64,000 nucleotides of DNA, taken from NCBI RefSeq assembly GCF_006345805.1, contig NW_021832223.1:62001-126000 (forward strand), given 5' to 3'. A program made the translations under genes and the position numbers. Source of the stretch: Octopus sinensis. Taxonomy: Eukaryota. Position 1 is the stretch's first letter. The number at the start of each line of letters is the position of its first letter. Below are positions 498 through 57,412 of this stretch, in pieces. Below the pieces are notes generated by a model that saw nothing but the letters and a program-made list of their open reading frames with translations, was not told the origin of the DNA and searched no databases.

Positions 498-720
498 TTA
501 ACTCTAACCTTAACCCAAACCCTAACGTTGGCAAATGAAAACATAAACATATTCAAAATCTGAATCCTAACCTTAACCCAAACCCTAACGTTGGCAAATG
601 ACAACATAAATATATTCAAAATCTGAACCCTAACCTTAACCCTAACGTTGGCAAGTGACAACATAAATTTATTCAAAATCTGAACCCTAACCTTAACCCA
701 AACCCTAACGTAACCCTAAC
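498..720. repeat. ~57-63-bp tandem repeat (about 3.5 units) built on telomere-like CCCTAA/CCTTAA/CCCAAA motifs
   Basis: Recurring unit cctaaccttaacccaaaccctaacgttggcaaatgacaacataaatatattcaaaatctga. Confidence 0.85.
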
Positions 721-4244: not shown

Positions 4245-6720
4245 ATCAATCGGGCGTCATGTGGTTCACCGTTTCTGGTGGCGTCAGATACAATCTTAAA
4301 TTGTATCCAAAAGAACCATTAGTCAAAATCCATCCAGCGGACCTCCCCCTGGACAGCACTCCCTCTAAGTTAGCGCACTTTCCTGGTGGCGGCTCATCAT
4401 TTCCGGAGATGTTGAGCAAAATCCTGGACCTAGAAAGAACCTCAATATACTGAGCTTGAATATCAACGGAGTTAGAGGCAAGGCCAAAGAACTAAAACTT
4501 TATCTGGAGAGGAAAGATATTGACGTCTGCCTCTTGCAAGAAACGAAGCTTTCGAAAACTGGCAAAACTCCCAATTTCTCTGGCTTCAATGTGCTAAGAG
4601 TAGATCGTCCATCGAGGCACGGCGGAGGCTTATTGACCCTTGTCAGAAAGGAAATCATCTTCTACAAAAACCACTCCACATTCAGGAAACTGGATAAAGA
4701 CTGTAATACAGAATTTCTCGCCATCTCCATTCTAACTTCTCTTGGACAAATTATTATTGGAAACATCTATATTCCACCTCCCGGCTCCTGTGCCAAAGAA
4801 TTTACAGTGGATCTGTCTGAACTTGACAAGGTGGAAAACTTGCTGGTCTCTGGCGATTTTAATGCCAATTTAACAAAGTTATTCTAAAGGGGAGAGATCT
4901 ATTTGTAAAGAAAGGAGTCCTGAAACTCACGAAAAGAAAATACGACGCTAAAACAGTCAAACTAATAAAAGAAAGAAATCGCCTCAAACACAGTACACAT
5001 CTGACGAAACTTACAACGAGAAGGATTCGGGTATTGAACATGGAGATCGCAGAAAGTGCGAGACGAGTGCAAAAAAGACAATTGGACACGATTTCCCGAG
5101 GGATGAACAAAAAGTGCTCACTCTCGAAAATGTGGAAGATGCTGCGTAACATTAAAAACGCCGACAGTACAAACGAGGATGACAACAATCACCAACTAGA
5201 CCTAAACACTTTTATGAAACATTGCGTGAAGATAAGTCACAAGGCTTATAAAAAATCGGAATCCTCTTCAATTATTAAGGGCAAACCGAAAAGGGAGCCT
5301 CCATCATCGTACTTCCTACCTCGAGATGTCGCTTTAGAAATTTCCCGACTAAAGAATACACGCTCCTGCGGACCAGACGGAATCCCAGCGATCATGCTCA
5401 AAAAATTGGGCGATGCAGCTATCTCTGCACTTACGAGTATTTACAACTACTCGTGCAACTTCAATTTCATTCCAACATTATGGAAACTGTCGTGCATTCA
5501 CCCAATCCTGAAGCCTGGAAAACCGAAGGAGCAACCTGGATCATACAGGCCACTGTCCCTTTTATGCGTCCAGGCACGAATTCTAGAGAGAATGGTGATG
5601 ACTTTGATTCGCCCCCTCCTCCCAGAAGTCAGTTTCCAACATGGATTCAAAGAGGGGCGATCAACTGTCACACACCTAAATGCTTTAATGAAGTTTATAT
5701 CAGACGGTCTAAACAAGAAACCTAAACAGGAAAAATCCATTGTCTGCTCGATCGACATAAAGAAGGCTTTCGATTCGGTGCCAAGGAAAATACTCACACA
5801 AAAGATCTATTCCTCAAATATTGATACGAATCTAAAACTATGGCTTGGGAATTTCCTGAGCGGCCGTCGGGGAAGGGCTTGCTGTGGAAACAGATCTTCC
5901 ATATCGAGACTATTACCAAATGGGGTCCCTCAGGGTTCTCCACTATCTCCACTTTTATTCAATCTCATGATGAACGACATACCACAGCCAGAAGGGGACA
6001 ACGATCTGTTATTACTATATGCAGATGATATTATCGTCGCATCAAGGGATGTGAGCATAATAAAAGCAACGGATAGAATACAGGATAACCTCAACAATCT
6101 GAGTTCATGGCTATATAAAAACGAACTGGAGGCAAGTCCGGAAAAATCTATTTTGACTCTGTTTACGAAAAACAGAAGGCTTGGGAAAGTCTCAATTGAA
6201 GCGAAGTTAGACGGGGAAATTATACCGCAGAGCAAAACCCAGAAGATTCTTGGTGTTACATTCGACACCTTTCTAACCTTTTCAACCCACGTCGAAAATG
6301 TAGTTATGGCGGGTGCAAGAAAGATTAACTTCCTGAATGCCTTCCTGAAGAACGCAGGAGAATGCAAAGGCCTATATGGCCTAAACAACATATATAATCA
6401 ATACATGGAACCTACGATCGGCTATGCGTGCGGAATCTGGGGAACAAACTTAAGCGCAATCAATCAAAAATCGACAAAATTCGGTTGAAAGCGGCAAACC
6501 TGCTAAACATTTTCTCCGATAAAGAGATTATCCCAAAAACCTGGAACAACAGAGAGGTTCGTCCTGAAAATCCCCGTCCGTACCGAAAATGCGTCGGGAC
6601 AACGGCGGAACATCGGGAGAGGCTGCGCGAACTGCTGAGGGAGGCTGGGATCACCTGAATTTTTCTTTCTTTTGGCTATGACGGTGGTTTTCTGGTTCAA
6701 TAAATAAATAAAAATAAATC
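4245..6720 (+). mobile_element. Single-ORF LINE: leader peptide - 2A-like motif - APE endonuclease - RT, with A/TAA-rich tail
   Basis: GDVEQNPGP (4405-4431) in frame with the APE ORF (LNINGV...LLQETK...GDFNA); RT 5034-6488 (YRPLSLL, QHGF, DIKKAFD, GVPQGS, YADD); ends LLREAGIT* then aataaataaata. Confidence 0.9.
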
Positions 6721-14092: not shown

Positions 14093-15659
14093 TTATATTA
14101 AATTCTTATTTATTGTCCGGGAAACAAATAATGTAAGGTAAATAAAATCTCCGAGAAGAATGAAAGAGAATGATATATACACCAACTTGGGAAAATCATC
14201 AATATTTTGAATAATAATCACAGTGATTGCCATAAGCAATGTAAAAAATTTATTCAAACTTGTCTGCACACTTCCTACACGTCCGCGATTTACCTCTTTG
14301 ACTGTTTCTAAAAAGCATTGAGTTATCGACAAATCCGTTATCCAAAGACCTTTATTTTAATTTCAAAAAATAACCAAATCTTGCAAAAATAACTCCGGCC
14401 ATAAAAATACTGATTTTTATTAATTTTTCTATGATTTTAAACATTAGAATACGATTAGAGTTTCCATTCGAAAGATTTACGGCAATAACTGTCAATGATA
14501 AAAATGAAACGTGAAAGAAAAGTCCAAATAATCCTGTTTTTATTAACTTTATTTTTCTCGATATCCAAGGAAATATAAAAGTCCCTGAAAAACCAATCAA
14601 AGCTCCTGCTCCTTGCAACAGTCCTAATGTCGTAGCCAAAAGACCTTGACTATAAGCATAGGCTAAAACTCATCCTAGTCTACAAACCAATAGTGACACT
14701 GTCGAACCCCAAAACGGTCATGTATAAGCATGAAAGGGCTATTCCCGCCAAAACAAATTCTTGTCGAAAGTAGAGAATCCAAGCATAAACAAGAGACCTA
14801 AGAATCCCTGGATTACTCTCGGTCATCATATCTTTTGATTGATTTTGGTTTGGAATTAATTCGTCAATTTCGGATTCTATTTTTAAGTACAAGTAAGAAC
14901 CGGAAAAGTCAATTTTTATGGCAAGCCGAGGGGTTGAATTATAAATATTGACCAAAATGAAATATTCTACACAAACCGAGACCAAATTCCAGGCTAAGAT
15001 GCACAAAATTGAGTTCCGAATTCCACAAAAATGGATTATTTGTCCAGTTGCTATCGGAGCAATAATCTTTGTCAGCAAATCAAGCCTTCTGATTACGGAA
15101 TTGGTTTCTAAAAAGTTTTAAAAAATTTATTCCTGAAAGGGAAGAATGATTTGTTTTCACTAAAATAACAAGCCAATCACGCTCTACAGAAACAGTTTCG
15201 GAGTCACTTCCCAACTCAGCCAAAACTGCGAAAAAAATGGTAAAAAACTATATTTAAAATTAAATAATTAACTGACTTGACATGTCGTGCTAATGGAAAA
15301 ATCATTTCTCCATTTTTCAATGGAAAATATCAACAGGAGATGAACTGCGGACAAGACGACACCCAAATTTTGAAATAAGAGAGCTGTTTTAATTACTAGG
15401 CAATCACAATTTAAGTCTGACCCTTTAATCTATGAGTTCTGTCAATCCAACACCCAATAGAACTCGCAAATAGAACTGACGACAAGTTCAAGCTTAAGAC
15501 TACAATCGATACTCCTAAAAGTGAATTGGGATATAGGTCTGTCATGTATAAAGCCAAAGCAAAATTCCACATGCGGTCTCCCTGAGATTCATTATTGTGT
15601 TCATGTACCCATGCAGCCAGCAAACGGGTGGCGTAGATTTTTACATTCCAAGACATCAT
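14093..15659 (-). CDS. SLC40A1: Ferroportin (SLC40A1 family iron exporter), multi-exon
   Basis: AW|GDRMWNFA, SIGCWIDRTHRLK, LTKIIAPIATG, ALSCLYMTVLGFD, ARFG|LWITDLSITQ, RGRVGSVQTSLN, joined across tiny GT-AG introns. Confidence 0.9.
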
Positions 15660-15920: not shown

Positions 15921-16448
15921 TTAGTTAAAATGAATATTATGCAATCTTTTGTTCTGCCTGGTTAACCTTAAGTAATAAAACATCAAACACCTTCTGTGCA
16001 AGTGAGCCAGCACAAAATGCAACAAAAGTAGAAATGTAAACATAAAATATGCAAAAAAATAATTGTTCGTAACTTTCGGCTTAAAATGCTGATCCCTACC
16101 AACGTATGGCCACTGCTTGTGGGTATAATTCGGCTGATGTTTGGAATTATATTCGTGAGGTTTTATGTCGTTCAAAAGAAAATTATAAGCATCGTTTATT
16201 TGAATAAAATCTTTGGTTTTAGTGGGATCAACATCTGGGTGATACTATTTGCATGTAATTAGTGAAAAACACCTTTTTACACTTTTCTATATACGCTTTT
16301 CTTATTTCTGCTTTTGTTGGATTGTTTGTGAGGTTGAGGATTTCGTAGGGATTTTTGTTAGAATATGAACGTATATTTCTGCAGGTTTAAATTTATATTA
16401 ATACTTCAAAGTAATAAAGAAATGTCTCACATGACATAACATAGACAT
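15921..16448 (-). CDS. DnaJ-domain protein with presequence-like N-terminus and C-terminal TM segment (DNAJC4-like)
   Basis: Spliced reading MSMLCHVRHFFITLK|NIRSYSNKNPYEILNL...IRKAYIEKCKK|YHPDVDPTKTKDFIQINDAYNFL...YFFAYFMFTFLLLLHF; HPD motif; introns of 26, 29 and 24 nt. Confidence 0.8.
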
Positions 16449-16563: not shown

Positions 16564-18685
16564 TAGGGCAACCAAAAGTCATATAAGTCATATTATTTTT
16601 TATTGGTCATATTGATGTTATTTCTATAATTAATAAACTATTATTATATTTTTTAATAGTTTTATTAATTTTTTTAGGTCTTATAGGTCATATTTTATGC
16701 CGTTAGGTCATATTATTTTTTTAGGTCATATTTTTTTTGTTAGGTCATATTTATATTTATTAAATCATATATTTTTATTAATCCCGGCATAAAAAGGAAC
16801 AGACAAAATTTCAAACGCAACTCAACACTCTTCCGAAACTTGAAGCAAAGAAAAATTTCGGAATTTGCTTAGTCGAAATGATGACGAAGGCGAATATACC
16901 TCTTTACAAAATAAGAAATGAACACTTTATTAATTTTTTTAATAATCTCGGATTTACTGTTCCCAGCGAAAGTTGGTGCAGAAATATACAGTCCCGTCCA
17001 AATGTTAGAGGCACCCTATTTTTTCCCTAAAAAGGCACTTGTTTATTATTTTTCGAAAGATTTTAAAGAATAAATTAAGTTTTTAAAGGAAATTAAACAT
17101 TTCCAAAGTTTTTATAAATATTCGACCGATAGTATTCTCAAACTTGAAAACAAAAAATAATTGGTCGCTCATATGTTAGAGGCACTTATGTAAAAAGCAA
17201 TAATTCTATAATTTATTATTATTAATTCTAATAAAAAATTCAAATGCCTCGTGTATCAGCTTATAACAGGTTTCTCGTCATCGAAAAATTAAAATGTGGC
17301 GAATCTCAGGTGAAAATATCCAAAGATTTGGGAATCTCTCGTTGTGCCATTCAAAAAATTAAAAAGCGATTTATTCAATAGTTTATTTTTTATTCAATAG
17401 TTTGTTATTAACAAAAAACTTTTTTCAAAAAATGACAAATAAGTGCCTTTTTTAGGGAAAAAATAGGGTGCCTCTAACATTTGGACGGGACTGTAGTTCC
17501 AGATTTGCAATATCAATTGATTGAAATGCTTAAAACAATTATTTCTGGAAAAGATATATTCATACTTGTTGATGAAACGGAAATCAATAAACAGAAATTT
17601 GTTAACGTTCTTTGTGGGACTATTGAAAGTCCTGAAAAAATTTATTTATTAAATTGTTTGGAAATTGAAATTTGTGATGCATCTGCAATTTGTAGAATTG
17701 TGGATGACACAATTCGAATTTATGATATAAAAAGGGAAAATTTTTTATTATTTATTTCTGATGCTGCCCGTTATATGACTTTACCAGCGAGTACGTTGAA
17801 GGTTATGTATATTAAAATGATTCATATAACTTGTTTTGCTCATCTTCTGCACAATTGTGCATTAAAGATTAGTGCACATTATAAATATATTAACGACTTA
17901 ATCTCGTCTATCAAAATGTCGATTGTAAAAAATCCCTCCCGGAGGAGTCTTTTTACAGTTATTGGACTTCCACCTGATGTTGTTCTAACAAGATGGGGCA
18001 GCTGGTTGGACGCAGCAAAATATTATAGTCGACATCTTTCAAGAGTTCGCGAAATTGTCTTATCCTATCCAAATTGTGGAAAGATTGTGATGAATGCGAA
18101 AAATGCTGTTAGCTCTGAAAATTTGAAGAAAAATCTGGCAGAGTTAATAGCTTCATACAACCCTATTATTGATGAAATCAGAAAATGCCAAGAAAAATTT
18201 TATACAATTAAAGATGCAATTGAATTCATTGATTCCGTTAATTTTGGTGAGGATAATTGTGACATCAACAAGTATTTTTTAAAGTGGATAAGTATGTTAC
18301 CATGGACGAATATTAAAAATGCTAGAATTTCTGGTATTTCTCCAGAAACATTTATTTACTTATGGAAATGTCCTTCAACATCAATATCTGCAGAAAGAAG
18401 CTTTTCTATGCTGAATAAATTGCTCGCAAAGGATAGAAACTTCAAGCTAGAAAATATTAAATATTATATGATGCAATATTATAATAAATTCATTGATTGA
18501 AATGTTTAATTTTTTCATATTTTCAAATTCAGAATATCTAAAAATCAAAATTCGATAGGTCATATTTTGATTTTTTAGGTCATATTTTAATATTTTTAAG
18601 TTATATTTTAGAATTTTAAAGTCATAAAGTCATATTTTTTACGGTCATATTTAACTTTTTTGAGGTCATATTTCTGGTTGCCCTA
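16564..18685 (+). mobile_element. hAT transposon, transposase interrupted by a Tc1 insertion
   Basis: TIR TAGGGCAACCA; perfect 8-bp TSD ATGATAAC; subterminal AGGTCATATT repeats; ORF 17481-18500 with LVDET, ISDAARYM, HITCFAHLLH, LTRWGSW, SAERSFS. Confidence 0.9.
16989..17493 (+). mobile_element. Internally deleted Tc1/mariner element nested in the hAT
   Basis: TIRs CAGTCCCGTCCAAATGTTAGAGGCACCCTATTTTTT, TA TSD, internal HTH start MPRVSAYNRFLVIEKLKCGESQVKISKDLGISRCAIQKI. Confidence 0.9.
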
Positions 18686-19928: not shown

Positions 19929-20002
19929 GCCCCGGTAGCTCAGTTGGTTAGAGCGTCGTGCTAATAACGCGAAGGTCTAGGGTTCGAGTCCCTGTCGGGG
20001 CA
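19929..20002 (+). tRNA. tRNA-Ile (anticodon AAT)
   Basis: Acceptor GCCCCGG/TCGGGGC, D arm TAGCTCAGTTGGTTAGAGC, anticodon arm TCGTG-CTAATAA-CGCGA, GGTTCGAGTCC T loop, T6 Pol III terminator at 20003-20008. Confidence 0.95.
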
Positions 20003-20719
20003 TTTTTTCATATTTTCGAAAATCCAGTAGAGTACGTATTTGCAGTGATTAGTTTTTGAAATTTTATCTCATTATATTAAGACCATAATACTTTCTATAT
20101 TATTTAACAAAAAGGACATCTTGTAAATTAATCGTATCAAAAGATGGTGATGTTTTTTTTGAAAAGTAGGAAAGTGTAGCAAATAAATTTTGATTCAAGT
20201 ATTCAAAACAACTTAACAAAGTCCGAGACTCTAGCTCTTAGATACATTTTTCATTTCTTCGAATATTACTCGTCGACATTATCCTCAAGCAAAGTGAAGA
20301 TCGAACCTTAACTCTATTTCCACAGACTCAAAATTATATGTCCAGTCATTCCACAATTAGAATCACAAGTCATTTTCACAAAATCACTTTAGGAAAGACA
20401 TAAATTATAAGGTTAATTTATTATTACCACGACAACGAAAAAGGCTCAATGCAATGAAAGAAAAAAGGCTCTAACCCTTATCCAAAACCTAATCCTATAT
20501 CGTCCAGGCCTTACTGGCCATTTCCCGCTTGCCTAGCTAGTAACTTGCTGCTTCTTTTATTATGTTCTTTGTGGGATACAATAAAATACCGACTGTTAGG
20601 TCCTTATGACAAGCAAAGATGTATTTTAGCAATTTTGATTGTATCTTGATAAAAGATCAGTTTTCCCGTTCGGTATGCATTTCTTGTATTCTCAATAATA
20701 TTGTTTATATTGTTGTTAT

Positions 20720-21000
20720 GTTTCTTATGTTTGATACCATTTTTCCCAGACTGAGGGTGACAATAACCATTCTGTGATTGGTACCAATTGTTGAACCTTC
20801 GTCCGCATATATGAAAATCCGCCATATGATGATGTAGTCAATTTGGTTGTATGGAAGCTCCGACCGGATTTGACGAATAACACTCTCATGGTTATTTCAT
20901 CTGAGATCGAATATACAAATATTACCCGCACTTGAAGAAAGGCAAGCGTCCGCGCAAAAAAAAACTGGCTGATTTGCACGACACAATATTCGTGGAGAAC
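20720..21000 (-). pseudogene. APE endonuclease remnant of an RTE-like LINE
   Basis: NQIDYIII...STIGTNHRMVIVTLSL, resembling the APE C-terminal IDY/SDH motifs. Confidence 0.5.
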
Positions 21001-21324
21001 CCCAAATCTAATTCTTCCGCGACTTGTTCTGTGGCCCTGTACATGTCGGTGATGGCAGAGAGTGAAGGCACGGATATGTCACGTTAATCTTATTAAAAAC
21101 TTACCCTTTAAGATATTTTGCCGACTATTCTTTTATTCCAGAAGATTTATTTGGAAACTTATTCGTAAAATATTTGAAATTAAATATTAAGAAGGACTAT
21201 CACCTATTTGAATATACTCATGCTTATGCCTGGCTTTGCCTAACTTGAACGTCTCAACAAAAGCAGACACAAATTAGCTAACTGTATACAAGCAGCAACC
21301 AGTTAAACGACTACATCGTCTCAG

Positions 21325-21919
21325 TAGTGATCCTTCTGCAGGTTCACTTACAGAAACCTTGTTACGACTTTTACTTCCTTTAAATGAGTAGGCTCGGGTG
21401 TCTACTCGCATGCTATAGTATAGCACACAATCCAACAACCTCACCAAATCATTAGTAGCGACGGACGGTGTGTACAAAGGGCAGGGACGTAATTATTGCA
21501 GGCTAATGACTTGCGATTACTAGGAATTCCTTGTGCACGAGGAATAATTACAAGCCTCGATTCCTGCCACGAAGAAATTTCAAGGCTTAGTTCGCTTTTC
21601 CAAGCAAAACCCATTCTGCTTTCTTCATTGTAGCACGCGTGCGGCCCCGAACGTCTAAGGGCAATCACAGACCTGTTATTGCTCATTTTCAAGTGTTTTA
21701 CACACTGATCCTTCTTAGTAGTCGAATAACTAGAATCGAACGACTAGTAAGTAAGTCTGATTCTCGTTCGTTATCGGAATAAACCAGACAAATCATTCCA
21801 CCAACCAACAACGGCCATGCACCACTACCCACAGTATCAAGAAAAAGCTATCAGTCTGTCAATCCTCACTGTGTTCGGCTCGGGTGAGTTTTTCTGCGTT
21901 GAGTCAAATTGAGCCGCAA

Positions 21920-21971
<52 letters not shown>

Positions 21972-22135
21972 AACCATACTCCCCCCGGAGCCCGAAGACT
22001 TTGGTTTCCCGGAAGCCACCCGCTAATGATCCAAATATTATCAGCGGAGTGCTAGTTGGCATCGTTTATAGTTAGAACTACCACGAGATCTAATTGACTT
22101 CGATATTCCAAATGTCGTTCTTGATGAACGTCCTG
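21325..22135 (-). rRNA. 18S rRNA: 3' half of 18S rDNA, divergent and probably pseudogenic, followed by ~80 bp of ITS1-like sequence
   Basis: Conserved blocks GCTGAAACTTAAAGGAATTGACGGAAGGGCACCACCAGGAGTGGAG, GGTGCATGGCCG, CAATAACAGGTCTGTG, TTGTACACACCG, AAGTCGTAACAAGG, GAACCTGCAGAAGGATCA. Confidence 0.95.
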
Positions 22136-23724
22136 GAACTGTCGGAAGGCTCAGGAGACGCAGGAAGGCCAGTCAAAAGAGGCGTGTAGTAAGTAGACAT
22201 CCTTGAGAGCGAGAACAAGTGGATTAGAACAGAGGAGTGGAAAACAAAGAGTATATTTGTGGGCGGCCTCGATCTGGTTGTAGAAGACCCCTCGGAAATA
22301 GTCGAGGGAGAACTAAATGCAATGTTCAATGGAGTTGGGGAAGTGTCTGACAGTGCAGAAGGCAAAGTCGTGACTGATGGGGTCGTTGGAGGAGTATGAC
22401 TCGGTGAGGTGGGGAACGACAGGCTGGCAGTGCCCCCTTGTTCCGTGAGTACCCGAGTCGATCATGGGGAGTCGGTAGTACAGGCATTTGAGATCGACAA
22501 ACTTGCGTGCGTCAAGTCTGTCGAGGGCAATGAGGACCAAGTCTAGTCGAACGTAGAACTGGTCGTTGAAATAGAAATCAGTAGGATGGCCGACTTGATA
22601 CTCCAATGCCTGGATGTTCATGTCCTTGTTCAGTTCCTTGATTGCTCGAGCTGCGGTAGTCGATCTAGGGCGCATCAAATCGGTGGAACGGAAGAGAAAT
22701 TGTCTGTTGAGGTTGGACCTCTCGATTCTGTCCATGTCGGTGACCCAGGTAGTGCCGGAGCCACAACTCACTCCCATCATTGCAAAGTTTTTGAGGAGTT
22801 CACAGCCAATGGCGCCCATGCCGACGATGAAAGTGTAGAGGAACATGAGTCTGTTTTGTACCTACGAAGGACATGACCACGGGCACTTTGACAGCCCTGA
22901 CTACTCCTCCTCCCTCGTACTTGCCGATAGAGGCATCAATGGAGAAGGACGAACTGCCTGAATGATGAGTGGTGGTTACTGATGAGTCGGATGGGCATCG
23001 GGGGATGCTCGTTTATTCCACTCATTTCTTTCACTTGGGAAAACGTGACCAGACTGTCGTCGTCCATGTCGAGTGGGTGGTCGTCGTGGACTAACACCAC
23101 TCCATTCTACACTCACAGAACACAGTACTTGGTCAATACACGTCACCACAGAAGGGCGAGAAACAATCCCGTTCGTGTCATACACTGTGAAAGCCTCCCC
23201 AAAGTCGCAGAATATTTGTCTGACAATCACACCACTCACCAACCCAAACACGCCCAACGAATTACACAAAATGAAGAGAATATTCGCCCAACGACACCAC
23301 TCATTTATTCGCGCGGCCTCCCCACTCATTTCGATGTTTTCCGTCACCACCACCATGCTATACTCACTCAACAATTCCATAGTCAACTCCCCCATCCACT
23401 CCACCACCACGTTCTCGTTCAGTTCTCTCAACCGTCCCACACACGCACTCGCTCTGTTCTCCCCCCGTAAAACTACTCCATCACTACTCACTCTCACTTG
23501 GCTCGACAGGTCTTGTCATCCTCGTGTCCTGCACACACACCACACCTATCCCCCCAAGGATTATATTCTTCGCTATCTCCACCCCTAATCCTCCCATTCC
23601 ACTTATCAACACACGTGCACTACTCGTCTTCCTCATTGCTTGGTGCCCCAATACAAATCTAACATATCTCACATCCCTCACACAGTTGCCGTGAATACAG
23701 TCCCTCGTCTATTTCACTCTTCAT
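22136..23724 (-). pseudogene. UBA1: Ubiquitin-activating enzyme E1 pseudogene (internal deletion, frameshifts, stops, 3'-truncated by 18S)
   Basis: MKSEIDEGLYSRQL|FVLGHQAM...GMGGLGVEIAKNIILGG; QIFCDFG; IVGMGAIGCELLKN, VTDMDRIERSNLNRQFLFR; catalytic region FCTVRHFPNSIEH. Confidence 0.9.
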
Positions 23725-24499
23725 TCGTTTCGCACGACTCATCTAATTCTGTATTAACATTTATCGCTTAGCTTTCACTACTAATTACTATAGCCACACA
23801 TCAACATTACAATTCATCACTACTTTCTCATTTTCACATTTGGGTTTACCACTCTATTACTCTGCAAATTAAATAATTTATTATTACCATTTACACAACT
23901 ACTATTAGACATGACCTGACTTTGAATAAAGTCTAAAGTCTTATCTACTTTAACTCACACGTGTGTCGTACAGCTTGAATATATTATGTTGAAATTTTTT
24001 TGCTTTTCTTGCAACGATTACGTCATGATCTACAATTCTAAAACAAATTTATATCATTGCTTCGTGTAACGATTTATTTAAACATTCGCTGTAATTGATG
24101 CTTCATAGTACACAATTGATTTAGAGACCAAATCGAAAGACTCCTGAAAATCAGAAAATTAATGTGTACACTTTTTGTCACAAGGCTGTGGGACAAATTT
24201 CCACTATAAACAATTTGTCGTAAAACTGTATTATTAATTAAAAAATCGAGAATATTCTTATACTCCTGAACATCCTTAACAATGTTGGCAAATCTCATTC
24301 CGATCATATTATCTCAAAGTGCGAAAAAATCTTTAATATTGAGTTGATAATTGTCAAGAGCTCAATTGGAGGTTAAATTCAAGGTTACAGCGTTTCACTT
24401 TAGACACGCGTTTCATTTATGGCGCTTGACAATGAATGATCTTGAACAAACATAAACTATTGCAACACCTCTGTGTTTTAATTAAAAACTGACAGGAAA

Positions 24500-25722
24500 T
24501 AAAAAACAATTTGTCTTTTGCAGATTGTCCTATGACTTTATTCAGTAGTCTGATCCGATGCCGGTTATCTTTTGTAAGATGAGAGCAGCGACCTTTCAAT
24601 GAGTTCCGTTCTTCGCTTAGAGGTAGAATCTCCGACAGAAATTTTCTTACTGGTTTTGGGTAAATTTTCCTCATTCTTAAGAATGATTTTCTTCCAATCA
24701 AAATTGTTCGGTAGAAGTGCTTGAGGGCGTTGTCGATCGAGTCGAAATCATGTACATCAAAGTTAACCAGTGCTTTGTCAATGGAATAGGCAAAATTGAC
24801 CCAATCTGCGTGCTTGTAGTCGTATTTCAGGTTGCGGAGCCCCTTTTTAATGGGCAATTTGACTTGGACTTTTATAATTAACGGATTGTGATCGCTCCGT
24901 AGATCGTAGGTAACGCCCCATTTGACCAGAGGTGCGAGGTTGGAAGAACAAAAAGTCAGATCGGGGGAGGTAGGCTTGTCCTTGGTGTTGTATGGAGTTC
25001 TTGTGTGCAGTGAGGGGTTGTCAGGATTACAAGGTTGTCCAATTGCTCGAGAATATACTTTTCTCGGGAGTCAGCGGTTTGTGACTTTAACCAATGCGGG
25101 TGTTTTGCATTCAAGTCCCCAAAATAATTAGATTATCACGATTATCAAACGGGCGTAGGTCTGTGATAAAATGTTTCGGGCACGATCCTGTTGGTGGGAT
25201 ATAATTGCAAATCACTATGTTTTCAAGTGAGGTGGGGATAGTAATTGCAGAAAATTCCAGACTCGTGTTTTTGCTTCCTTTAGGGCTGAGCGAAGGGGAG
25301 TATTCCTGGTAAGTGATTCCCTTCTTAATAAGTGTTATGAGACCCCCTCCACGGCCTGAGGGTCTGTCCAGGCGTTCCATGTGGTAGTTGGGGAAACGTG
25401 GAGACCTTGAAGAGGGATTGAGTTTTGTTTCTTGGAGTACACATATGTCGATATCATGCTTGATCAAAAAAGAGTTTAGTTCTGTTGATTTTCCAGTAAC
25501 TCCGTTGATGTTTAGTTGGAGAATTGATATATGTCTCTTTGGGCCGGGATTAGGTTCCACATCCCCACAGATAGTGAGAAGGGCAAAACGGGAGAGTGAG
25601 GTCCACAGAGAAGGCCGCCCCGGACTGACGATAGTCGCGGGGGGATGAGCGAATGATTCTTTTTTCATTAATCCAATAACTGGATTTTTGCGCCACCACA
25701 AAAGGCGAATCACACGACGCAT
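24500..25722 (-). mobile_element. 5' part of a second 2A-LINE (leader - 2A - APE - linker)
   Basis: MRRVIRLLWWR...LLTICGDVEPNPGPKRHISILQLNING...LQETK; TSPDLTFCSS; YDYKHADW linker. Confidence 0.85.
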
Positions 25723-38130: not shown

Positions 38131-40913
38131 TATTATTATTCGTATTTGATTTCTTTTATTTATTACTTGCTTCTGACGTGTTTAAGTGTAAAACTAAATG
38201 TGGTTATAACCTACTATTCCGAACTAAAAATGTTTTTATTGTTTGTTCATTTTTTAAGATAAATAACCTGGAGTGCCCAACAGACATATTGGATTGTCAG
38301 AATAATGTATTATTTTTAGGTTTGGGATTCATCTTAATGAGATCGCCTTGTTTATTTATTTGAGTAGAACAAAAGTCAACTTAATTTTTATCAGATATTA
38401 AATGGAGTAATACACGGAATAGACCAAAATTCACCAAAAAATGTGTTTAAAATTCAGAAAATAATTAATTGGCAAAATAAGTTTAGGAATCATTGCGATT
38501 TAAATAGCGAGAAAAGTCCTCAATTTCAAAATCGAATTTTGACTCATAGACATTAATAATTTGGTTTCCCACTGTAGTAGAGTAATCGACCAGGTTTTTA
38601 GAAGAGTTCTTCCACTCCATTAAAGTAGAAATACATTCATCGGCTTCTTTTTGTGCTATAAATATCATCATTCATAGATATATGGATACTTTTAAAGTCA
38701 TCGTGTTGGTCAGTGTATTTTGTTAGTTGTTCTGTGATTATCTACAGAGATAATTATTTAAAATGTTAACTTCATTGTATTTATTAAGGATAGGAATTTG
38801 ATCTTTGATTTTGTTCTTTGTTAATATTTTCCACAGTTTATTTGTAAGATATGAAGCAATTTCTGATTCTTCAGACATGTCACCACAAACACAAATTGAA
38901 ACGAGCCAATTTAATATAATTTATTGATCTGCAAATTTAAAACAATAAACATGTAATGTTTAGTGTAAATATTATATTACGTTATTTAAAAAATAGGTGC
39001 AGATATAAGTCGAAGATGGTTAAATTTTTTTTAATTTTTTAGGATTTTGCAAGCTTTAACGTCGAAAGCGTCGAAGCGTCGAAATCAAAACAACATTTTT
39101 TGTTCTATTCATTAACTGTAATTTTTTTATTCTGTAAGGGAAAAATATTTCAGCAGTTCTTATAGAAAATGATTTCGTAATTGTTTATTACCACAAAACA
39201 GATTTCTTTCTGCTTTTTATTTTGAGCACCGTCCAATAGAAGGCACTGACTGTTATCTTCGATTTCAATTTGTAAACATTGATAATTATCTGCATTTTTT
39301 TCTTACTGTAGTATCAATATTTTGTCTCCTGGAATTTTCGACCAACCCAAGAATGTATTGCTTGTGTAAATCATTCAATTTGTAAGAATAATCTCCCTCA
39401 CAAAGTTTGTTCTAGATATCTCCGGGTTTTCTCCTTTGACAAAGTATTCTGCTTATAAAGGATAGAGGGATATTTAAATAGTCACTTATTTCTTTGTTAG
39501 ATTTCCAATTAATTGATTGTTTAACGATTAGTTTTTTTGGTTGAAAGGAATATACACCCCCGACATAAATATTGGTGAATCTTCAACTTACTTAATTTAT
39601 ACAAAGAATGATTTAATTTTTTCTTCCGATATATTTTAAAATCTAATAAAATTGCAAATAATTAATTTAATTATTTAAATTTTGAAATTTTGTCTAAGAA
39701 ATTTGGAAAAAACAACGACTTTCATTGACATAAAATTTGGTTATTGTCAAATTAATATTAGAATAACCTCCTTTTGCCGAATAGATCTCCCAAAACCTTT
39801 TTTTCATTGACCCAACTAATGTTTCAAATGTTTTTGTTGGTGTTTTAAATTTGTTGCAATATTAAAATTTAAATTTATTTTTGTTATAAATACAAAATAA
39901 ATATTATTTTAGAAGATCTAAAGAATCCTAAAGTTAGAATTTATTCGTTTTTAAATGAATAGAAGCAGGAAAGATTGAATAACCAAATTTTTTGTCGAGG
40001 GGTGTAGTTTTTCTTTTTTGTTTAGGTCTTAATCTAATACAGAATCTCCCGAAAAACGTTAATGCTTCCTCTACCAGCCGTATATGCAGTATACATGCTA
40101 AGCTTTGAGTTTTGATATCAGGGTTGTTAAAAATAAAAAGAATAAGATTTTTTTGCTTTAAATCTGATTTTTATGAAATAAATGATTTTTATTCAAAAAC
40201 AACATAAATAAAAATGAAAACAATAGAAATCGTATTTAAAAGCTTGTAAATAAAGACAACTTTGGCGGTTTTTTCAATTCCAAGCATATTTCGTAAATTT
40301 GAATGTAGGAATCCAAAAGTCGAAAATATTCGTTTTATTCCACCTGTTGAAGCGACTGCTCCAAGAATTTTTTTTGAAGACTAAAATTGTTTCAGAAGGT
40401 AGTAAGAGTTTGACTCACACCAAGCTATAGGTGATACTTTACTCAATAAGTTTGAAGCGAACATTTATTACTTAAATGGTTCTGCTCTTGCTCTGAAATT
40501 AATCAGAGTCGGGAAAGCATATTCATAATGTTCAACACAATACTTCAAAGCGATGTCATTCTCTACAGTTGGAAAAGATTTCCCACAACATGCTAAGTCC
40601 ATTAGATTTGCAAGTAAGTGGAAAGGTCTTAATGATTGTTTAGCTCGAGTTTTTACTTTTTCTAAAATAGCTGTACATTCATATAACTCTGTTCAAGTTT
40701 CTTCCAAATGTCTACAGCAGGCATTTTCAACTTTTTTTGTTCATCACCCCCTTAGATATTTTATCGCCCCCTTTGAAATTTTATCGCCCCCTTGTGCACA
40801 TACAATTTAAAATTTTGGCCATTGTCCCTTAATTGGTTGTTTTTTGTATATAACTCAAAAATCAAAATATAAAATAATAAATCAAATGTAAAAAATTGAA
40901 TTTTTATTAAAAA

Positions 40914-43900
40914 CTAGCTCGGCAGCTCGCTTCGCTCACCGCGACCTAGCTCCTGCGGAGGGCCTGTTTCATCAAACAACTATAAGTTTATGTAGATGTA
41001 TAAACTACCTGGGTTAATGTAACCCTATTCTATCGCCTGTTGAAAAAACGATGTTTGTCGTCCGTCCTTCCTTGGCATATATGAATAAATTTTCTCTTCT
41101 GCTACCCTCGAGCATCCCACATACAGCTGCCATGTGAAAAACACTCACTCTCTAAAAATACCCAACTACCTTTAATGACTGTCCCTGGGCCTTGTTTATT
41201 GTCATTGCAAAACTCATCCTCAAAGGAAATTTCAGCCTTTTAAATCTAAATGGTAATTCATCAGAAATTATCGGGATTCGTGGAATATAAACATCCTCAC
41301 CTCTATACTTACCTTTAATATCGTCGCCTCTATTACGTTAGCCATCAATTTTTGATAACTAACCTCGTTCCGTTGCCATAATTTAGGTGGCGCAAGATTT
41401 CGTAATAAAACCACTGGAACGCCTATCTTTAATTTTAAAAGATGATTCGGCATTCCAGAGGGATCTAAGAGTTTAAAAATTCAAGCGGCAGGCGAAGATG
41501 CGGCAGGCAGAGATGCGGCAGGCAAAAAGCGACACACAAAATAGATTTAATTAATTACCTTATTAAGCTGACCGTTTTTTCTTCAACTTCGTTTTTCCTC
41601 CTTTGGTTATCTATTTAAAAAATTATTTTTGAATAATAAAAAATATTAGGAAAAAAGAGGCATACAGAAATAAATCTATCTTTACGAAAAACTTCTTTTC
41701 TTAAGGTCGTCTTCCCTCCTTCGGTTATCTATTGAAAAAATTATTTTTGAATAATAAAAAGTTTAGAAAAAGAGGCATACCGAAATAAAATTCTAGATTT
41801 ACGAAAAACTTAACTAAATAGTTAATATTTTTACGCAAATTTTTCTGATGCGCTGTCAATTGGTGGTAAATTGTGTTAATGATTGTGCTAATGTGGTTTC
41901 AACTATCAAAGTGTTTTTCAAAATCTGTTAATTGCACACTCTATTCAAGGTCGTGCGTCAATTGGTGGTAAATTGTGTTAATGATTGTGCTAATGTGGTT
42001 TCAACTATCAAAGTGGTTTTTTCAAAATCTGTTAATTGCACACTCTATTCAAAGTCGTGCAATCTGTAATTGCACATTATGTTAAGTCAAATATGATAAT
42101 AGCTTTAATTTTGATTCATGTCGATAATGGTATATGCATTTAATTTTAAAGAGAAAAACATAGGATGAATTGAATTTCTTTCTTGCGAATAATTAGGAGT
42201 TCATCAGTGTTAATATTCTCGCTGTCGTTTTCATCAAGGATATTCTTGATACGTGAGATATTTGCCTCGAAGGTTTTAATGGACCTCATCATGAATGTCG
42301 AGGACATTAACGTTATTCATTTTAATCAAATGCAGAAAATAATTTTTTGATTTTTTGGCGGTAAGGTTTCAAGGACCTCATCATGTAAGTCGAGGACATC
42401 GTAGTTGTTCATTTTAAAAAACCAAAGCAAAATTTTTTTTAATTTTTTTTTGGGTGAAGGTTTTAAGGACCCCATCATGTAAGTCGAGGACTTCGTAGTT
42501 GTTCATTTTAACCAAAATGCAGAAAGTTTTTTTTAATTTTTTTGGGGGGGAAGGTTTTAAGGACCTCATCATGTAGTCGAGGACATCGTAGTTGTTCATT
42601 TTAACCAAAATGCAGAAAATAATTTTTTGATTTTTGGCGGGAAGGTTTTAAGGACCTCATCATGTAAGTCGAGGACATCGTAGTTGTTCATTTTAACCAA
42701 AATGCAAAAAATAATTTTTTGATTTTTTGGCGGGAAGGTTTTAAGACCTCATCATGTAGTCGAGGACATCGTAGTTGTTCATTTTAACCAAAATGCAGAA
42801 AATTTTTTTTAATTTTTTTTGGGGGGGAAGGTTTTAAGGACCTCATCATGTAAGTCGAGGACATCGTGTTGTTCATTTTAACCAAAATGCAGAAAATAAT
42901 TTTTTGATTTTTGGCGGGAGGTTTTTAAGGACCTCATCATGTAAGTCGAGGACATCGTAGTTGTCATTTTATTTAACCAAAATGCAGAAAATAATTTTTT
43001 GATTTTTGGCGGGAAGGTTTTAAGGACCTCATCATGTAAGTCGAGGACATCGTAGTTGTTCATTTTAACCAAAATGCAGAAAATAATTTTTGATTTTTTT
43101 TGGGGGGAAGGTTTTAAGGACCTCATCATGTAAGTCGAGGACATCGTGGTTGTTCATTTAACCAAAATGCAGAAAATTTTTTTTAATTTTTTTTGGGGGG
43201 AAGGTTTTAAGGACCCATCATGTAAGTCGAGGACATCGTGGTTGTTCATTTTAACCAAAATGCAGAAAATAATTTTTTTTTTTTGGCGGGAAGGTTTTAA
43301 GGACCTCATCATGTAAGTCGAGGACATCGTATTGTTCATTTTAACCAAAATGCAGAATAATTTTTGATTTTTTGGCGGGAAGGTTTTAAGGACCTCATCA
43401 TGTAAGTCGAGGACATCGTAGTTGTTCATTTTAACCAAAATGCAGAAAATAATTTTTTGATTTTTGGCGGGAAGGTTTTAAGGACCTCATCATGTAAGTC
43501 GAGGACATCGTAGTTGTTCATTTTAACCAAAATGCAGAAAATTTTTTTTAATTTTTTTTGGGGGGAAGGTTTTAAGGACCTCATCATGTAAGTCGAGGAC
43601 ATCGTGGTTGTTCATTTAACCAAAATGCAGAAAATAATTTTTGATTTTTTGGCGGGAAGGTTTAAGGACCTCATCATGTAAGTCGAGGACATCGTAGTTG
43701 TTCATTTTAACCAAAATGCAGAAAATAATTTTTGATTTTTTGGCGGAAGGTTTTAAGGACCTCATCATGTAAGTCGAGGACATCGTAGTTGTTCATTTTA
43801 ACCAAATTGCAGAAATTTTTTTTAATTTTTTTGGGGGGGAAGGTTTTAAGGACCTCATCATGTAAGTCGAGGACATCGTAGTTGTTCATTTTAACCAAAA

Positions 43901-44508
43901 TGCAGAAAATTTTTTTTAATTTTTTTGGGGGGGAAGGTTTTAAGGACCTCATCATGTAAGTCGAGGACATCGTAGTTGTTCATTTTAACCAAAATGCAGA
44001 AAATAATTTTTTGATTTTTTGGCGGGAAGGTTTTAAGGACCTCATCATGTAAGTCGAGGACATCGTAGTTGTTCATTTTAACCAAAATGCAGAAAATAAT
44101 TTTTTGATTTTTTGGCGGGAAGGTTTTAAGGACCTCATCATGTAAGTCGAGGACATCGTAGTTGTTCATTTTAACCAAAATGCAGAAAATAATTTTTTGA
44201 TTTTTTGGCGGGAAGGTTTTAAGGACCTCATCATGTAAGTCGAGGACATCGTGGTTGTTCATTTTAAACAAAATGCAAAAAATTTTTTTTAATTTTTTTG
44301 GGGGAAGGTTTTAAGGATCTCATCATGTAAGTCGAGGACATCGTAGGGTGGAAGATTCTTGGAGGAGTTCATGATTTTAAGCTTGTTCCCCATTATTGGC
44401 TAATTATAAGGGGGAAAGATTTTGACAATTTATCTGTACTTTGCCAATTTGAAATTGGTGTGCACACACAGACAGACAGACACACACCATACCATTTTAT
44501 TATTAAGA
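40914..44508 (-). mobile_element. Non-autonomous Helitron with helicase C-terminus and internal satellite array
   Basis: 5' TCTTAATAATAAAATGG, 3' hairpin plus CTAG, A^T target; PIF1 C-terminal MPNHLLKLKIGVPVVLLRNL; GTCT microsatellite near the 5' end. Confidence 0.9.
42280..44345. repeat. ~93-bp satellite array (about 22 units) inside the Helitron
   Basis: Unit gtaagtcgaggacatcgtagttgttcattttaaccaaaatgcagaaa...gaaggttttaaggacctcatcat. Confidence 0.95.
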
Positions 44509-47700: not shown

Positions 47701-48000
47701 GAAGATGAAGATTGGAAAGTACAAGGAGCTCTCTGAACGGTATCTGTTCACTCCCATCGCCGTCGAGACTTCCGGCGTCATCGGCGAAAAGTCTCTTTCC
47801 TTTTAAAAAAGCTTGGCCGCATGATCTCCCATAAACGGGGAGACCCACGCGAGTCCAAGTGGCTTTTCGAAAGGATTTCCTTGGCCATAGTACGTGGAAA
47901 CTGTGTTTCCATTTACGATGCCGGGAATTTAGTTAGTTAATAACTATTTGTTAATTACATATAATATGTGAATAAAAAAAAAAAACTGAAAAAAAAAAAA
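44770..48000 (+). mobile_element. Full-length CRE-like non-LTR retrotransposon: PHD finger - RT - CCHC - restriction-like endonuclease
   Basis: 11-bp TSD AATCGAATCAT (44759-44769 / 48001-48011); poly(A) tail; ATG 45010; RPIAVG, GVQQGDPLGP, YLDD, CRCG...HPLSC, RPDG...WDATC, AVETSG; stop 47938-47940; several frameshifts. Confidence 0.92.
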
Positions 48001-51365: not shown

Positions 51366-51506
51366 TTGTATATTAAACAAATTCATTGATTTGTTTAAAT
51401 CGAATCTGCACAACCTGCAATTTTAGATAAACATAGAAAAGCCAGCCTGCAACCAGATTCGGGAATATCCTGCAGTTAGAGGATGGAATGAATTGAATAT
51501 AAAGGA

Positions 51507-56450: not shown

Positions 56451-56759
56451 TTTACTTTCCAAATTTTACAGCAAAATTACGAAATTGCAATTTATTGTTT
56501 GTAAATCGAAATTAACAAAACTTACTGACTGTCAGCCTTTGGAAACCAACAACAGCTGAATTGTTATCTGAAGACTATCCGTTAATGAAACGTCAACATC
56601 AAATTGACAAAAAATCATATCGAAAGAAATCATATCGAACAAGTCGGGACAGATACATTGCAGATCCGATTGATTTCCGACGTTATTCAGAATTCAATGA
56701 TTTTTTAATGTTATTTTTAGTGTAGATTTTAATTATAATCGATTCTTTTTAAATTCTTG

Positions 56760-57412
56760 TTCAACTCAATGCATCGGAAGGCAACCCCTTGGACGACATT
56801 GACCTAATAAAAATGCTGGGGGCCTCAAAAATTAAGTCAGAAGAGATTAGCGTTCTTTTTAATAGTCAACCTTCCATAGACAAAAGTGGAAAAGACAAAA
56901 GTATTTTTTGCGTGGTAGACCTGCCCAAGATCGACCCAATGTACCAATAGTCGATGGAGTGGTTCGCAAAATATTTCTCAAAAATATTACCAACGCAAAA
57001 AACTCAGGTCACCTCAAAAAGCGGAAAATAAATTGTAGATGTCCTGAAGGAGAGGATAACTTTAATAAACGAGCATTTTACTTTCAATTTGTACTCCAAT
57101 GTGTTTCGGTCGCTCTTTGAACGTGACAAACTCATGTTGGCATTCCTCTTTTGTATGCGAATCAAACACAATTTTGGAGAAATAAAAGCAGTGTGTAAAA
57201 TGCAAAGAGTGCTTAGAACGAATGGAGATATCTCCTGTTGGGCTCAGTCGAGAAGACCATCCAAAAACCGAACCCTGTTCCAGACTGGCTCTCCGACAGA
57301 AATTGGAAGGAACTGGGGGGACTGGCCTCACTGGAATTGTTAAAAGAAATAATCGAGAACTTTATAGACAACTATTGCGAATATAAACATATGTTTGATA
57401 TTTCAGATCCCC
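56760..57412 (+). pseudogene. Axonemal dynein heavy chain fragment (stalk-AAA5 to AAA6 linker region)
   Basis: ASEGNPLDDIDLIKMLGASK, IDPMYQ*SMEWF, FNLYSNVFRSLFERDKLM, NPVPDWLSDRNW. Confidence 0.8.

What the first reader, a model, noticed from the sequence alone, without database searches (positions are those of the whole stretch)
21240..23900. Foreign-looking cassette: GC-rich UBA1 pseudogene fused to half of an 18S rDNA
Seen: UBA1 (ATG 23724) is about half GC by eye, whereas neighbouring host genes are strongly AT-rich. Its introns are just as short (22-25 nt) but G/purine-rich (e.g. GTGTGAGGGATGTGAGATATGTTAG at 23659-23683; GTGAGAGTGAGTAGTGATGGAGTAG), unlike the A/T-rich host introns. It has lost the segment between ...VKVPVVMSF and the second adenylation domain, and breaks at about 22135 straight into mid-18S, which runs to its 3' end and ITS1-like sequence on the same strand. 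An RTE-like endonuclease remnant lies next to it. Inference: DNA from a different micro-intron organism (e.g. a co-infecting relative) was integrated, rearranged and decayed, leaving a horizontal-transfer fossil with its own rRNA barcode. Alternatives are an old endogenous paralogue or an assembly chimera. Introns are retained, so this is DNA-level rather than retroposed.
Basis: partly seen in the sequence, partly recalled or inferred. Interest (0 to 1): 0.78.

Follow-up and report, generated by a model that had tools for sequence, protein, structure and literature searches.

The report
Dead UBA1 fragment fused to half-18S
A 2.7-kb piece of junk DNA in a transposon-rich stretch of a tiny-intron animal genome (probably a dicyemid) joins the front two-thirds of a ubiquitin-activating enzyme gene to the back half of an 18S rRNA gene; it is real and oddly composed, but nothing here shows it came from another organism.

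Summary
On the minus strand, 23724-22131 is a truncated UBA1 gene. It has five retained micro-introns (22-31 nt), about 155 codons missing from the middle and no C-terminal third. At 22128-22142 it runs straight into the 3' half of a eukaryotic 18S rRNA (to 21325), followed by about 110 nt of ITS1-like sequence. It is the most atypically composed stretch of the window.

The copy looks young. When spliced, the first 244 codons are fully open, as are the next 177; only two nonsense codons follow.

The composition is not one foreign signature. There are two roughly mirror-image blocks, G-rich/C-poor down to 23091 and then increasingly C-rich. Introns follow the same pattern as the exons around them. 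Protein divergence is proportionate in both blocks.

Retained introns, an upstream stretch with seven ATGs and no poly(A) favour DNA-level joining of gene and rDNA fragments. The source is most simply the host lineage itself: the protein is metazoan-like and fast-evolving, with host-sized introns.

Foreign origin could not be tested, because no copy of the host's or any donor's UBA1 or rDNA could be retrieved. A 16-nt exact repeat may mark a target-site duplication. Interest is modest.

The parts
23725..23873 (-). Non-coding sequence upstream of the UBA1 start codon. It is C-poor (7% C) and holds 7 upstream ATGs, so it is probably promoter or intergenic DNA copied along with the gene.
23092..23724 (-). 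UBA1 exons 1-4 (23724-23684, 23658-23498, 23472-23244, 23219-23122) with introns 1-4 (23683-23659, 23497-23473, 23243-23220, 23121-23091). This is the G-rich, C-poor block A and encodes the N-terminal part of the first (inactive) adenylation domain.
22866..23091 (-). UBA1 exon 5 (23090-22980), the C-rich intron 5 (22979-22958) and exon 6 (22957-22866). It encodes the FCCH domain and ends ...VKVPVVMSF. The cumulative G-C curve peaks at 23091.
22847..22865 (-). Internal deletion junction. About 155 codons are absent (human UBA1 residues about 305-455: the rest of the first adenylation domain and the four-helix bundle).
22316..22846 (-). Second (active) adenylation domain. It is an open stretch of 177 codons, with C at 50% of third codon positions.
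22131..22315 (-). Remnant of the start of the SCCH domain, with in-frame TAG (22315-22313) and TGA (22153-22151). The catalytic-cysteine region and the UFD domain are missing.
22128..22142 (-). UBA1/18S junction. Up to about 10 nt could be assigned to either partner, so microhomology is possible but cannot be verified.
21325..22127 (-). 3' half of a eukaryotic 18S rRNA (Rfam model positions about 975-1831). Most helices are intact, one pair in helix 45 is compensated, and the 60 nt next to the junction are the most degenerate.
21215..21324 (-). ITS1-like sequence after the 18S 3' end. Its far border is set only by composition, to within about 30 nt.
20430..21214 (.). Stretch of host-like composition with no recognisable domain or RNA. 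It belongs to the inserted unit only if the 16-nt repeat is a true target-site duplication.
23874..23889 (.). Copy 1 of the exact 16-nt direct repeat TAATTTATTATTACCA (plus strand). It lies where the C-poor block begins and is a candidate target-site duplication.
20414..20429 (.). Copy 2 of the same 16-nt repeat.
24417..25722 (-). RTE-like LINE remnant on the same strand. It comprises an endonuclease domain (25722-25111, with a 2A-like DVEPNPGP at 25563-25540) and a linker (24857-24417). No reverse-transcriptase domain follows.

Best explanation
This is a non-functional, fairly young mosaic pseudogene, most likely made at the DNA level inside the host lineage, which is most likely a dicyemid. 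The genomic 5' two-thirds of a functional UBA1 gene was copied with its upstream DNA and its introns. That copy lost an internal segment of about 155 codons. It was joined by illegitimate end-joining or microhomology-mediated recombination to a fragment of the rDNA unit (18S from about position 975 to its end, plus the start of ITS1). The composite lies in a transposon-rich, AT-rich region.

Shown: the anatomy, the junctions, the open reading frames, the retained introns and the compositional contrast.

Inferred: the DNA-level mechanism, the endogenous source, and that the unusual composition was inherited from the source gene. That composition is a G-rich coding strand down to 23091, then neutral, then C-rich. 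It was not acquired after the copy was made.
For: All five micro-introns are retained and all are in frame. The spliced reading has 244 open codons, whereas the unspliced sequence has 13-18 stops in each frame.

The 149 nt upstream of the ATG contain 7 ATGs, which does not fit a real 5' UTR. There is no poly(A) or LINE tail at the cassette's 3' border.

Only 2 nonsense codons occur in about 480 codons, so the copy is too young for its composition to have drifted towards that of the host.

C is retained at 12-14% in exons but at 2% in introns 1-4. Protein divergence is proportionate in the G-rich block (43-45% identity, against 53-64% between reference proteins) and the C-rich block (51-57%, against 61-74%). 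Both results indicate that the composition evolved under purifying selection in one source gene.

All named best hits are metazoan, and the PDB search scores UBA1 above UBA6 and UBA7.

Among animals, this intron size class is reported only for Dicyema japonicum and myxobolids (PMC13644364). The host's own genes have 26-29-nt introns. The window also carries a fragment of a DNAH1-type axonemal dynein, which points to a ciliated host.

A resident LINE at 45-47.8 kb is also about 50% GC with a C-rich coding strand, so such composition occurs in resident sequence.

The window has no gaps or N.
Against: The host's functional UBA1 and rDNA could not be retrieved, so the endogenous origin rests on parsimony.

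The cassette's 4-mer profile is the most atypical in the window. Its introns are 45-47% GC, against 14-35% in the host introns seen.

The candidate 16-nt target-site duplication would fit an endonuclease- or LINE-mediated insertion better than plain end-joining.

The roughly mirror-image strand composition, with an abrupt change at a 3' splice site (23091), remains unexplained.
Confidence: 0.55

Rival explanations
1. Horizontal-transfer fossil. DNA from another micro-intron organism, for example a co-infecting dicyemid species, integrated and rearranged, carrying its own UBA1 and 18S.
For: The composition is strongly atypical: the UBA1 windows have the lowest 4-mer correlation in the window, and GC is 45-53% against 31-37% in the flanks. 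The introns are GC-richer than the host introns seen. The copy is young, so its composition reflects its source. No close relative was found in the searchable collections.
Against: There is no donor sequence and no tree. The intron size class equals the host's and is otherwise nearly unique among animals (PMC13644364). The composition is two opposite blocks rather than one genomic signature. A resident LINE shares the 50% GC and the C-rich coding strand. An 18S is always GC-richer than an AT-rich genome. If the 16-nt repeat is a target-site duplication, the inserted unit also contains 785 nt of host-like DNA, which argues that it was assembled inside the host.
Confidence: 0.12
2. LINE-mediated chimeric retrocopy. 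An RTE-type reverse transcriptase copied a pre-rRNA (an 18S precursor ending in ITS1). It then switched template to an unspliced UBA1 pre-mRNA, once or twice, and ran to that RNA's 5' end. The product inserted with a target-site duplication.
For: All parts are in one orientation. The 3' end lies a short way into ITS1, where 18S precursors end (established knowledge). RTE-like elements are in the window, and one remnant lies just upstream on the same strand. There is a candidate 16-nt target-site duplication: a longest exact repeat of 16 nt or more arose in 9 of 300 simulations. The sequence on both sides of the UBA1/18S junction is more degenerate than elsewhere.
Against: All five introns are retained. 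The upstream 149 nt hold 7 ATGs. There is no poly(A) or recognisable LINE 3' tail at either candidate 3' end; similarity to the RTE tails is weak. The 16-nt repeat brackets 785 nt of extra unidentified DNA.
Confidence: 0.13
3. Assembly or library artefact. Chimeric reads or mixed-species input joined UBA1, rDNA and host repeats, or a functional host UBA1 locus was mis-joined.
For: Published dicyemid material was rinsed out of octopus renal sacs, and complete removal of host cells was reported to be infeasible (PMC6736024). rDNA and repeats are typical sites of mis-joins. The long open reading frames would fit a functional gene that was cut by a mis-join.
Against: At least three internal junctions lie within 1.7 kb, inside a gap-free 64-kb contig. 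The TAG and TGA are substitutions rather than the indels typical of long-read errors. The sequence flanking the UBA1/18S junction is diverged on both sides, as expected of real evolved DNA.
Confidence: 0.12
4. Gene-fragment capture by a DNA transposon (Helitron or Pack-type). The transposon picked up UBA1 and rDNA pieces at the DNA level.
For: A Helitron with RepHel ORFs and three copies of its 3' terminus are in the window. A dynein gene fragment with a retained micro-intron abuts one Helitron end. This kind of capture keeps introns and strings fragments together in one orientation (established knowledge).
Against: No Helitron terminus, hairpin-CTAG end or terminal inverted repeat lies near either border of the cassette. 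No second copy exists in the window.
Confidence: 0.06

Closest known systems
Dispersed rRNA pseudogenes (rDNA 'orphons'; for example rRNA pseudogenes in filamentous ascomycetes, PMC5555474 abstract)
   Same: It is a partial rRNA gene outside the rDNA array that has escaped concerted evolution. It is truncated and carries some broken helices.
   Different: Here the fragment is fused head-to-tail to a protein-gene fragment. It is still very rRNA-like (733 bits over about 800 nt).
Unprocessed (duplicated) pseudogenes, and filler DNA captured at double-strand breaks (established knowledge)
   Same: Introns and upstream DNA are retained, the junctions between unrelated loci are abrupt, there is an internal deletion, and there is no poly(A).
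   Different: A possible 16-nt target-site duplication is not expected from simple end-joining. The source loci have not been identified.
Chimeric retrogenes made by LINE reverse-transcriptase template switching (for example the U6/L1-type chimeras of mammals; established knowledge)
   Same: Several cellular RNA-type sequences, including an rRNA, are joined in one orientation next to LINE sequence. A candidate target-site duplication is present.
   Different: The introns are not removed, there is no poly(A) or LINE 3' part at the 3' end, and promoter-like upstream DNA is present.
Gene-fragment capture by Helitrons or Pack-MULEs (established knowledge)
   Same: It is a mosaic of intron-containing gene fragments, in a genome that carries Helitrons.
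   Different: No transposon termini flank the cassette.
Horizontal transfer of RTE/BovB-type elements between animals (PMC9007160 abstract)
   Same: An RTE-like element lies alongside, in a parasite setting, and the composition is foreign-looking.
   Different: What looks foreign here is a host-type housekeeping gene plus rDNA, not the transposon. No donor has been identified.

Membership tests
Functional UBA1 (ubiquitin E1) gene | Complete first (inactive) adenylation domain, including the four-helix bundle | tested here: not met
   Human-equivalent residues about 305-455 are absent. No remnant lies elsewhere in the window.
Functional UBA1 (ubiquitin E1) gene | Second (active) adenylation domain of the ThiF type | tested here: met
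   PF00899 scores E=3.7e-41 over 177 open codons. Identity to other UBA1 proteins is 51-59%.
Functional UBA1 (ubiquitin E1) gene | Catalytic-cysteine (SCCH) domain and C-terminal UFD domain | tested here: not met
   Only about 60 codons of the SCCH domain remain, with TAG and TGA in frame, and 18S follows.
Eukaryotic 18S rRNA gene | Match to the SSU_rRNA_eukarya model in sequence and structure | tested here: met
   RF01960 scores 692-733 bits, far above the gathering score of 50.
Eukaryotic 18S rRNA gene | Full length, within an rDNA unit (18S-ITS1-5.8S) | tested here: not met
   Only model positions about 975-1831 are present. There is no 5.8S downstream and no 5' half upstream.
Processed (retroposed) pseudogene | Introns removed | tested here: not met
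   Five introns of 22-31 nt are retained.
Processed (retroposed) pseudogene | 3' poly(A) or LINE tail | tested here: not met
   None is present at 21215 or at 20430. Resemblance to the RTE tails is weak.
Processed (retroposed) pseudogene | Flanking target-site duplication | tested here: inconclusive
   An exact 16-nt repeat lies at 23874-23889 and 20414-20429. A repeat this long arose in 9 of 300 simulations. It brackets an extra 785 nt of host-like DNA.
Helitron-captured gene fragment | Helitron termini (5' TC; 3' hairpin plus CTRR) flanking the fragment | tested here: not met
   The 3' terminus family occurs at about 57436, 40913 and 51506 only. None lies near 20.4-24 kb.
Horizontally transferred DNA | Composition unlike the recipient genome | tested here: met
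   The 4-mer correlation is the lowest in the window, and GC is 45-53% against 31-37% in the flanks. A resident LINE is nearly as atypical.
Horizontally transferred DNA | Closer to a donor lineage than to the recipient's own copies (phylogenetic incongruence) | not testable with these tools
   Neither the host's nor any donor's UBA1 or rDNA is in the searchable collections. Best protein identity is 59%, two exact-sequence look-ups of window ORFs found nothing, and the only metagenome 18S matches are 72-77% identical.

The most novel reading that the evidence does not exclude
The cassette preserves a snapshot of a gene from a genome or locus with extreme, locally reversing strand asymmetry. Introns in the first block have 2% C and 45% G; the intron in the next block has 36% C and 9% G. 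The source would be either another dicyemid species (a true animal-to-animal transfer that carries its own 18S/ITS1 barcode) or an unrecognised compositional compartment of the host genome.
Probability: 0.12. Interest if true: 0.6.

Novelty: new member of a known kind. Interest (0 to 1): 0.3.

Why it matters
As a composite pseudogene it is ordinary genomic debris. It mainly matters for annotation: it should not be called as a UBA1 gene, and its 18S should not be used as a barcode.

Two things give it some value. First, it is a young, datable copy that freezes the sequence of its source gene. A simple comparison with the assembly's own UBA1 and rDNA would decide between an endogenous and a foreign origin in a parasite where several species share one host.

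Second, the sharp reversal of strand composition inside one reading frame, shared by exons and introns, is unusual. If it is typical of the functional gene, it points to a strong local mutational asymmetry in this little-studied lineage that would be worth measuring genome-wide.

Tried and rejected
1. Variant genetic code (TAG=Gln, TGA=Trp, as in some ciliates). The two in-frame stops do align with Q and W. But 14 other Gln codons are CAA or CAG, the named best hits are metazoan, and CAG>TAG and TGG>TGA are simply the expected transition nonsense mutations. Rejected.

2. Hypermutation after inactivation (deamination, editing, or damage to resected single strands). Purine content is 62% overall in block A and G alone is 45% in its introns, which transitions cannot produce. 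C is kept in exons but not in introns. There are no stops in 244 codons. Protein divergence of block A is proportionate to that of block C. Rejected as the main cause.

3. Frameshifts at exon 3/4 and exon 4/5. My first reading used GTGAGT donor sites. Choosing GTTGGT (24-nt intron) and GTTCTG (31-nt intron) instead restores the frame and the conserved GVFGQIFCDFG motif. There are therefore no frameshifts in the 5' part.

4. Other copies or remnants in the window. None were found.

5. Helitron or terminal-inverted-repeat termini at the borders. None were found.

6. RTE 3'-tail homology of the two 16-mers and the sequence upstream of them. It is weak and not significant.

7. Identifying the 785-nt stretch at 20430-21214. 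Pfam and Rfam found nothing.

8. Finding the source gene or the host assembly. Two protein searches gave at most 59% and 50% identity. Exact-sequence look-ups of two window ORFs found nothing. One protein search with the dynein fragment returned nothing.

9. A metagenome scan with a 34-mer from the 18S. It found two unrelated rDNAs, only 72-77% identical.

10. Myxobolid host. This is disfavoured by the DNAH1-type axonemal dynein fragment, because myxozoans are regarded as lacking cilia (own knowledge).
Full report
**What is there**

Read on the minus strand, the region contains a UBA1-like gene that starts at ATG 23724. Pfam finds ThiF plus E1_FCCH in its first part. In its second part it finds ThiF (E=3.7e-41) plus the start of the SCCH domain. 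A search of PDB sequences aligns the two parts to human UBA1 residues 48-304 and 456-674. UBA1 entries score above UBA6 and UBA7.

I built an exon model of six exons and five introns.

| Feature | Coordinates (minus strand) | Intron length |
|---|---|---|
| Exon 1 | 23724-23684 | |
| Intron 1 | 23683-23659 | 25 nt |
| Exon 2 | 23658-23498 | |
| Intron 2 | 23497-23473 | 25 nt |
| Exon 3 | 23472-23244 | |
| Intron 3 | 23243-23220 | 24 nt |
| Exon 4 | 23219-23122 | |
| Intron 4 | 23121-23091 | 31 nt |
| Exon 5 | 23090-22980 | |
| Intron 5 | 22979-22958 | 22 nt |
| Exon 6 | 22957-22866 | |

When spliced, these give 244 codons with no stop. The other two frames hold 22 and 9 stops, and every frame of the unspliced sequence holds 13-18. 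The introns are therefore real, and the copy was taken from a working gene not long ago.

After ...VKVPVVMSF, about 155 codons are missing. The reading then resumes in the second adenylation domain, which is open for 177 codons (22846-22316). A TAG (22315-22313) and a TGA (22153-22151) follow, in about 60 codons of SCCH remnant. No other UBA1 remnants exist in the window.

At 22128-22142 the sequence passes into 18S rRNA. Rfam RF01960 scores 692-733 bits for model positions about 975-1831, ending at 21325. About 110 nt of moderately GC-rich, ITS1-like sequence follow. There is no 5.8S downstream and no 18S 5' half upstream.

Most helices of the 18S piece are intact, and one pair in helix 45 is compensated (C:G to U:A). 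It was therefore copied from a functional, divergent rRNA gene. The 60 nt next to the junction are the most degenerate.

**Surroundings and host**

The window is AT-rich (35.1% GC, no gaps) and full of mobile elements:
- two RTE-like LINEs;
- a 50%-GC LINE at 44.8-47.8 kb;
- a Helitron at 57.6-61.2 kb, with three copies of its 3' terminus in the window;
- hAT-like ORFs;
- satellites.

A ferroportin-like host gene (15659-14093, minus strand) has AT-rich introns of 26-29 nt.

Among animals, introns this short are reported only from Dicyema japonicum and myxobolid myxozoans (PMC13644364). A gene fragment at 56753-57426 matches DNAH1-type axonemal dynein best (E=1e-36), which points to a ciliated host, that is a dicyemid. 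D. japonicum has 36.7% GC and 49% repeats (PMC6736024). This identification is an inference. The assembly itself is not in the searchable collections.

**Composition**

| Stretch | GC |
|---|---|
| UBA1 block A (23900-23092) | 45% |
| UBA1 block B (23091-22866) | 54% |
| UBA1 block C (22865-22136) | 51% |
| Upstream flank (24400-23901) | 31% |
| Downstream flank (21214-20430) | 37% |

The UBA1 windows have the lowest tetranucleotide correlation with the rest of the window (r = -0.08 to 0.06, against a median of 0.86). The 45-47.6 kb LINE is next lowest.

The cassette is not uniform, however. From about 23900 to 23091 the coding strand is G-rich and C-poor (G 280, C 82 of 809 bases). After 23091, G is about equal to C. 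From about 22700 onwards, C exceeds G. The cumulative G-C curve peaks exactly at 23091, which is the 3' splice site of intron 4.

Sites under little selection show this most clearly:
- Introns 1-4: C = 2%, G = 45%, T = 32%.
- Intron 5: C = 36%, G = 9%.
- Third codon positions: 44% G in block A, and 47-50% C in blocks B and C.

The two regimes are roughly reverse complements of each other.

C survives at 12-14% in the exons of block A, against 2% in its introns. Block A is no more diverged at the protein level than block C, relative to how conserved each region normally is. Block A is 43-45% identical to reference proteins that are 53-64% identical to each other. Block C is 51-57% identical to references that are 61-74% identical to each other.

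I conclude that the composition evolved under purifying selection in a single, fast-evolving source gene. It was inherited by the copy rather than produced by hypermutation afterwards. Why the strand bias reverses within the gene remains unexplained.

**Borders**

The 5' border is where C drops, at about 23900-23874. The 3' border is set by composition at about 21215.

An exact 16-nt direct repeat (TAATTTATTATTACCA) lies at 23874-23889 and at 20414-20429. The sequences flanking the two copies are not homologous. A longest exact repeat of 16 nt or more arose in 9 of 300 composition-matched simulations of the 7.5-kb region. One copy sits right at the 5' border.

If it is a target-site duplication, the inserted unit is 20430-23873. 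That unit would include 785 nt of host-like, unidentifiable DNA, which would argue that the mosaic was assembled inside the host.

No terminal inverted repeats or Helitron termini flank the cassette. No poly(A) or convincing LINE tail ends it.

The RTE-like remnant upstream is on the same strand. It comprises the endonuclease (25722-25111) and a linker (24857-24417) but lacks its reverse-transcriptase domain. About 500 nt of AT-rich DNA separate it from the cassette.

**Mechanism**

The evidence favours DNA-level copying and illegitimate joining of a UBA1 gene fragment and an rDNA fragment. All introns are retained, the 149 nt upstream hold 7 ATGs, there is no 3' tail, and the junctions are not at RNA ends.

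A LINE template-switch chimera is the main mechanistic rival. It fits the single orientation, the end in ITS1, the neighbouring RTE and the candidate target-site duplication. It requires a completely unspliced pre-mRNA.

**Origin**

I could not retrieve any close relative:
- The best protein identities were 59% for the adenylation domain and 42-50% for the N-terminal part.
- All named top hits are metazoan.
- A metagenome scan with an 18S 34-mer found only two unrelated rDNAs, 72-77% identical.

Parsimony favours the host lineage. The intron size class is the same and is very rare, the UBA1 is a fast-evolving metazoan type, and a resident LINE has a similar GC content and a C-rich coding strand. 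A co-infecting relative as donor is not excluded; I give it about 0.12. An assembly artefact gets about the same.

**Verdict**

The reading as a pseudogene fused to half an 18S, and the DNA-level inference, are supported. The reading as a horizontal-transfer fossil is unproven and less likely than an endogenous mosaic pseudogene.

This is a new instance of a known kind of genomic debris. It carries one curious, unexplained feature, the reversing strand composition.

Noticed in passing
window 4408-4431 (+) and 25540-25563 (-): Both RTE-like LINE copies carry a 2A-like 'ribosome-skipping' motif (DVEQNPGP and DVEPNPGP) just upstream of their endonuclease domains.
   Followed up: partly
window 56753-57426 (+): An isolated fragment of a DNAH1-type axonemal dynein heavy-chain gene (E=1e-36 to DNAH1 structures) retains a 26-nt intron. 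It ends about 6 nt from a Helitron 3' terminus. It is a second intron-bearing gene fragment in this transposon-rich window, and it is evidence for a ciliated host.
   Followed up: partly
window 57571-61157 (-); termini at about 57434-57487, 40913-40966, 51506-51559: A Helitron carries Rep/helicase ORFs. Its 3' end (a GC-rich hairpin followed by CTAG, then T) recurs twice more in the window at 91% identity.
   Followed up: partly
window 44779-47806 (+): A LINE has a PHD-finger ORF and a reverse-transcriptase region. It is about 50% GC with a C-rich coding strand, and it is the second most atypical composition in the window. Foreign-looking composition is therefore not unique to the cassette.
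   Followed up: partly
window 23092-23900 versus 22136-23091 (-): The strand composition reverses inside one reading frame, exactly at a 3' splice site (23091), and the introns follow the exons around them. No mechanism has been established.
   Followed up: yes
window 500-711: A tandem repeat of about 57-63 nt has units that contain telomere-like CCCTAA/AACCCT runs, forming an interstitial telomere-like array.
   Followed up: no
window 42269-44346, 52906-53799, 62498-64000: Three large arrays of a 93-96-nt satellite are present. The first two share one unit. The third (62498-64000) has a unit of similar length but a different printed consensus, and I did not test whether it is related. The arrays create spurious long repetitive ORFs.
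   Followed up: no
window 19929-20002 (+): A tRNA-Ile(AAT) gene lies about 400 nt beyond the second copy of the 16-nt repeat.
   Followed up: no
window 14093-15659 (-) and 15924-16244 (-): A ferroportin-like host gene has AT-rich introns of 26-29 nt, and a DnaJ-domain exon lies next to it. I used them as the baseline for host composition.
   Followed up: partly
window 17481-18500 (+) and 48190-49629 (-): hAT/ZBED-like transposase ORFs are present. One has a weak DUF659 match. The other starts with a BED-finger-like MSGRKRDFIWIHF... sequence.
   Followed up: no
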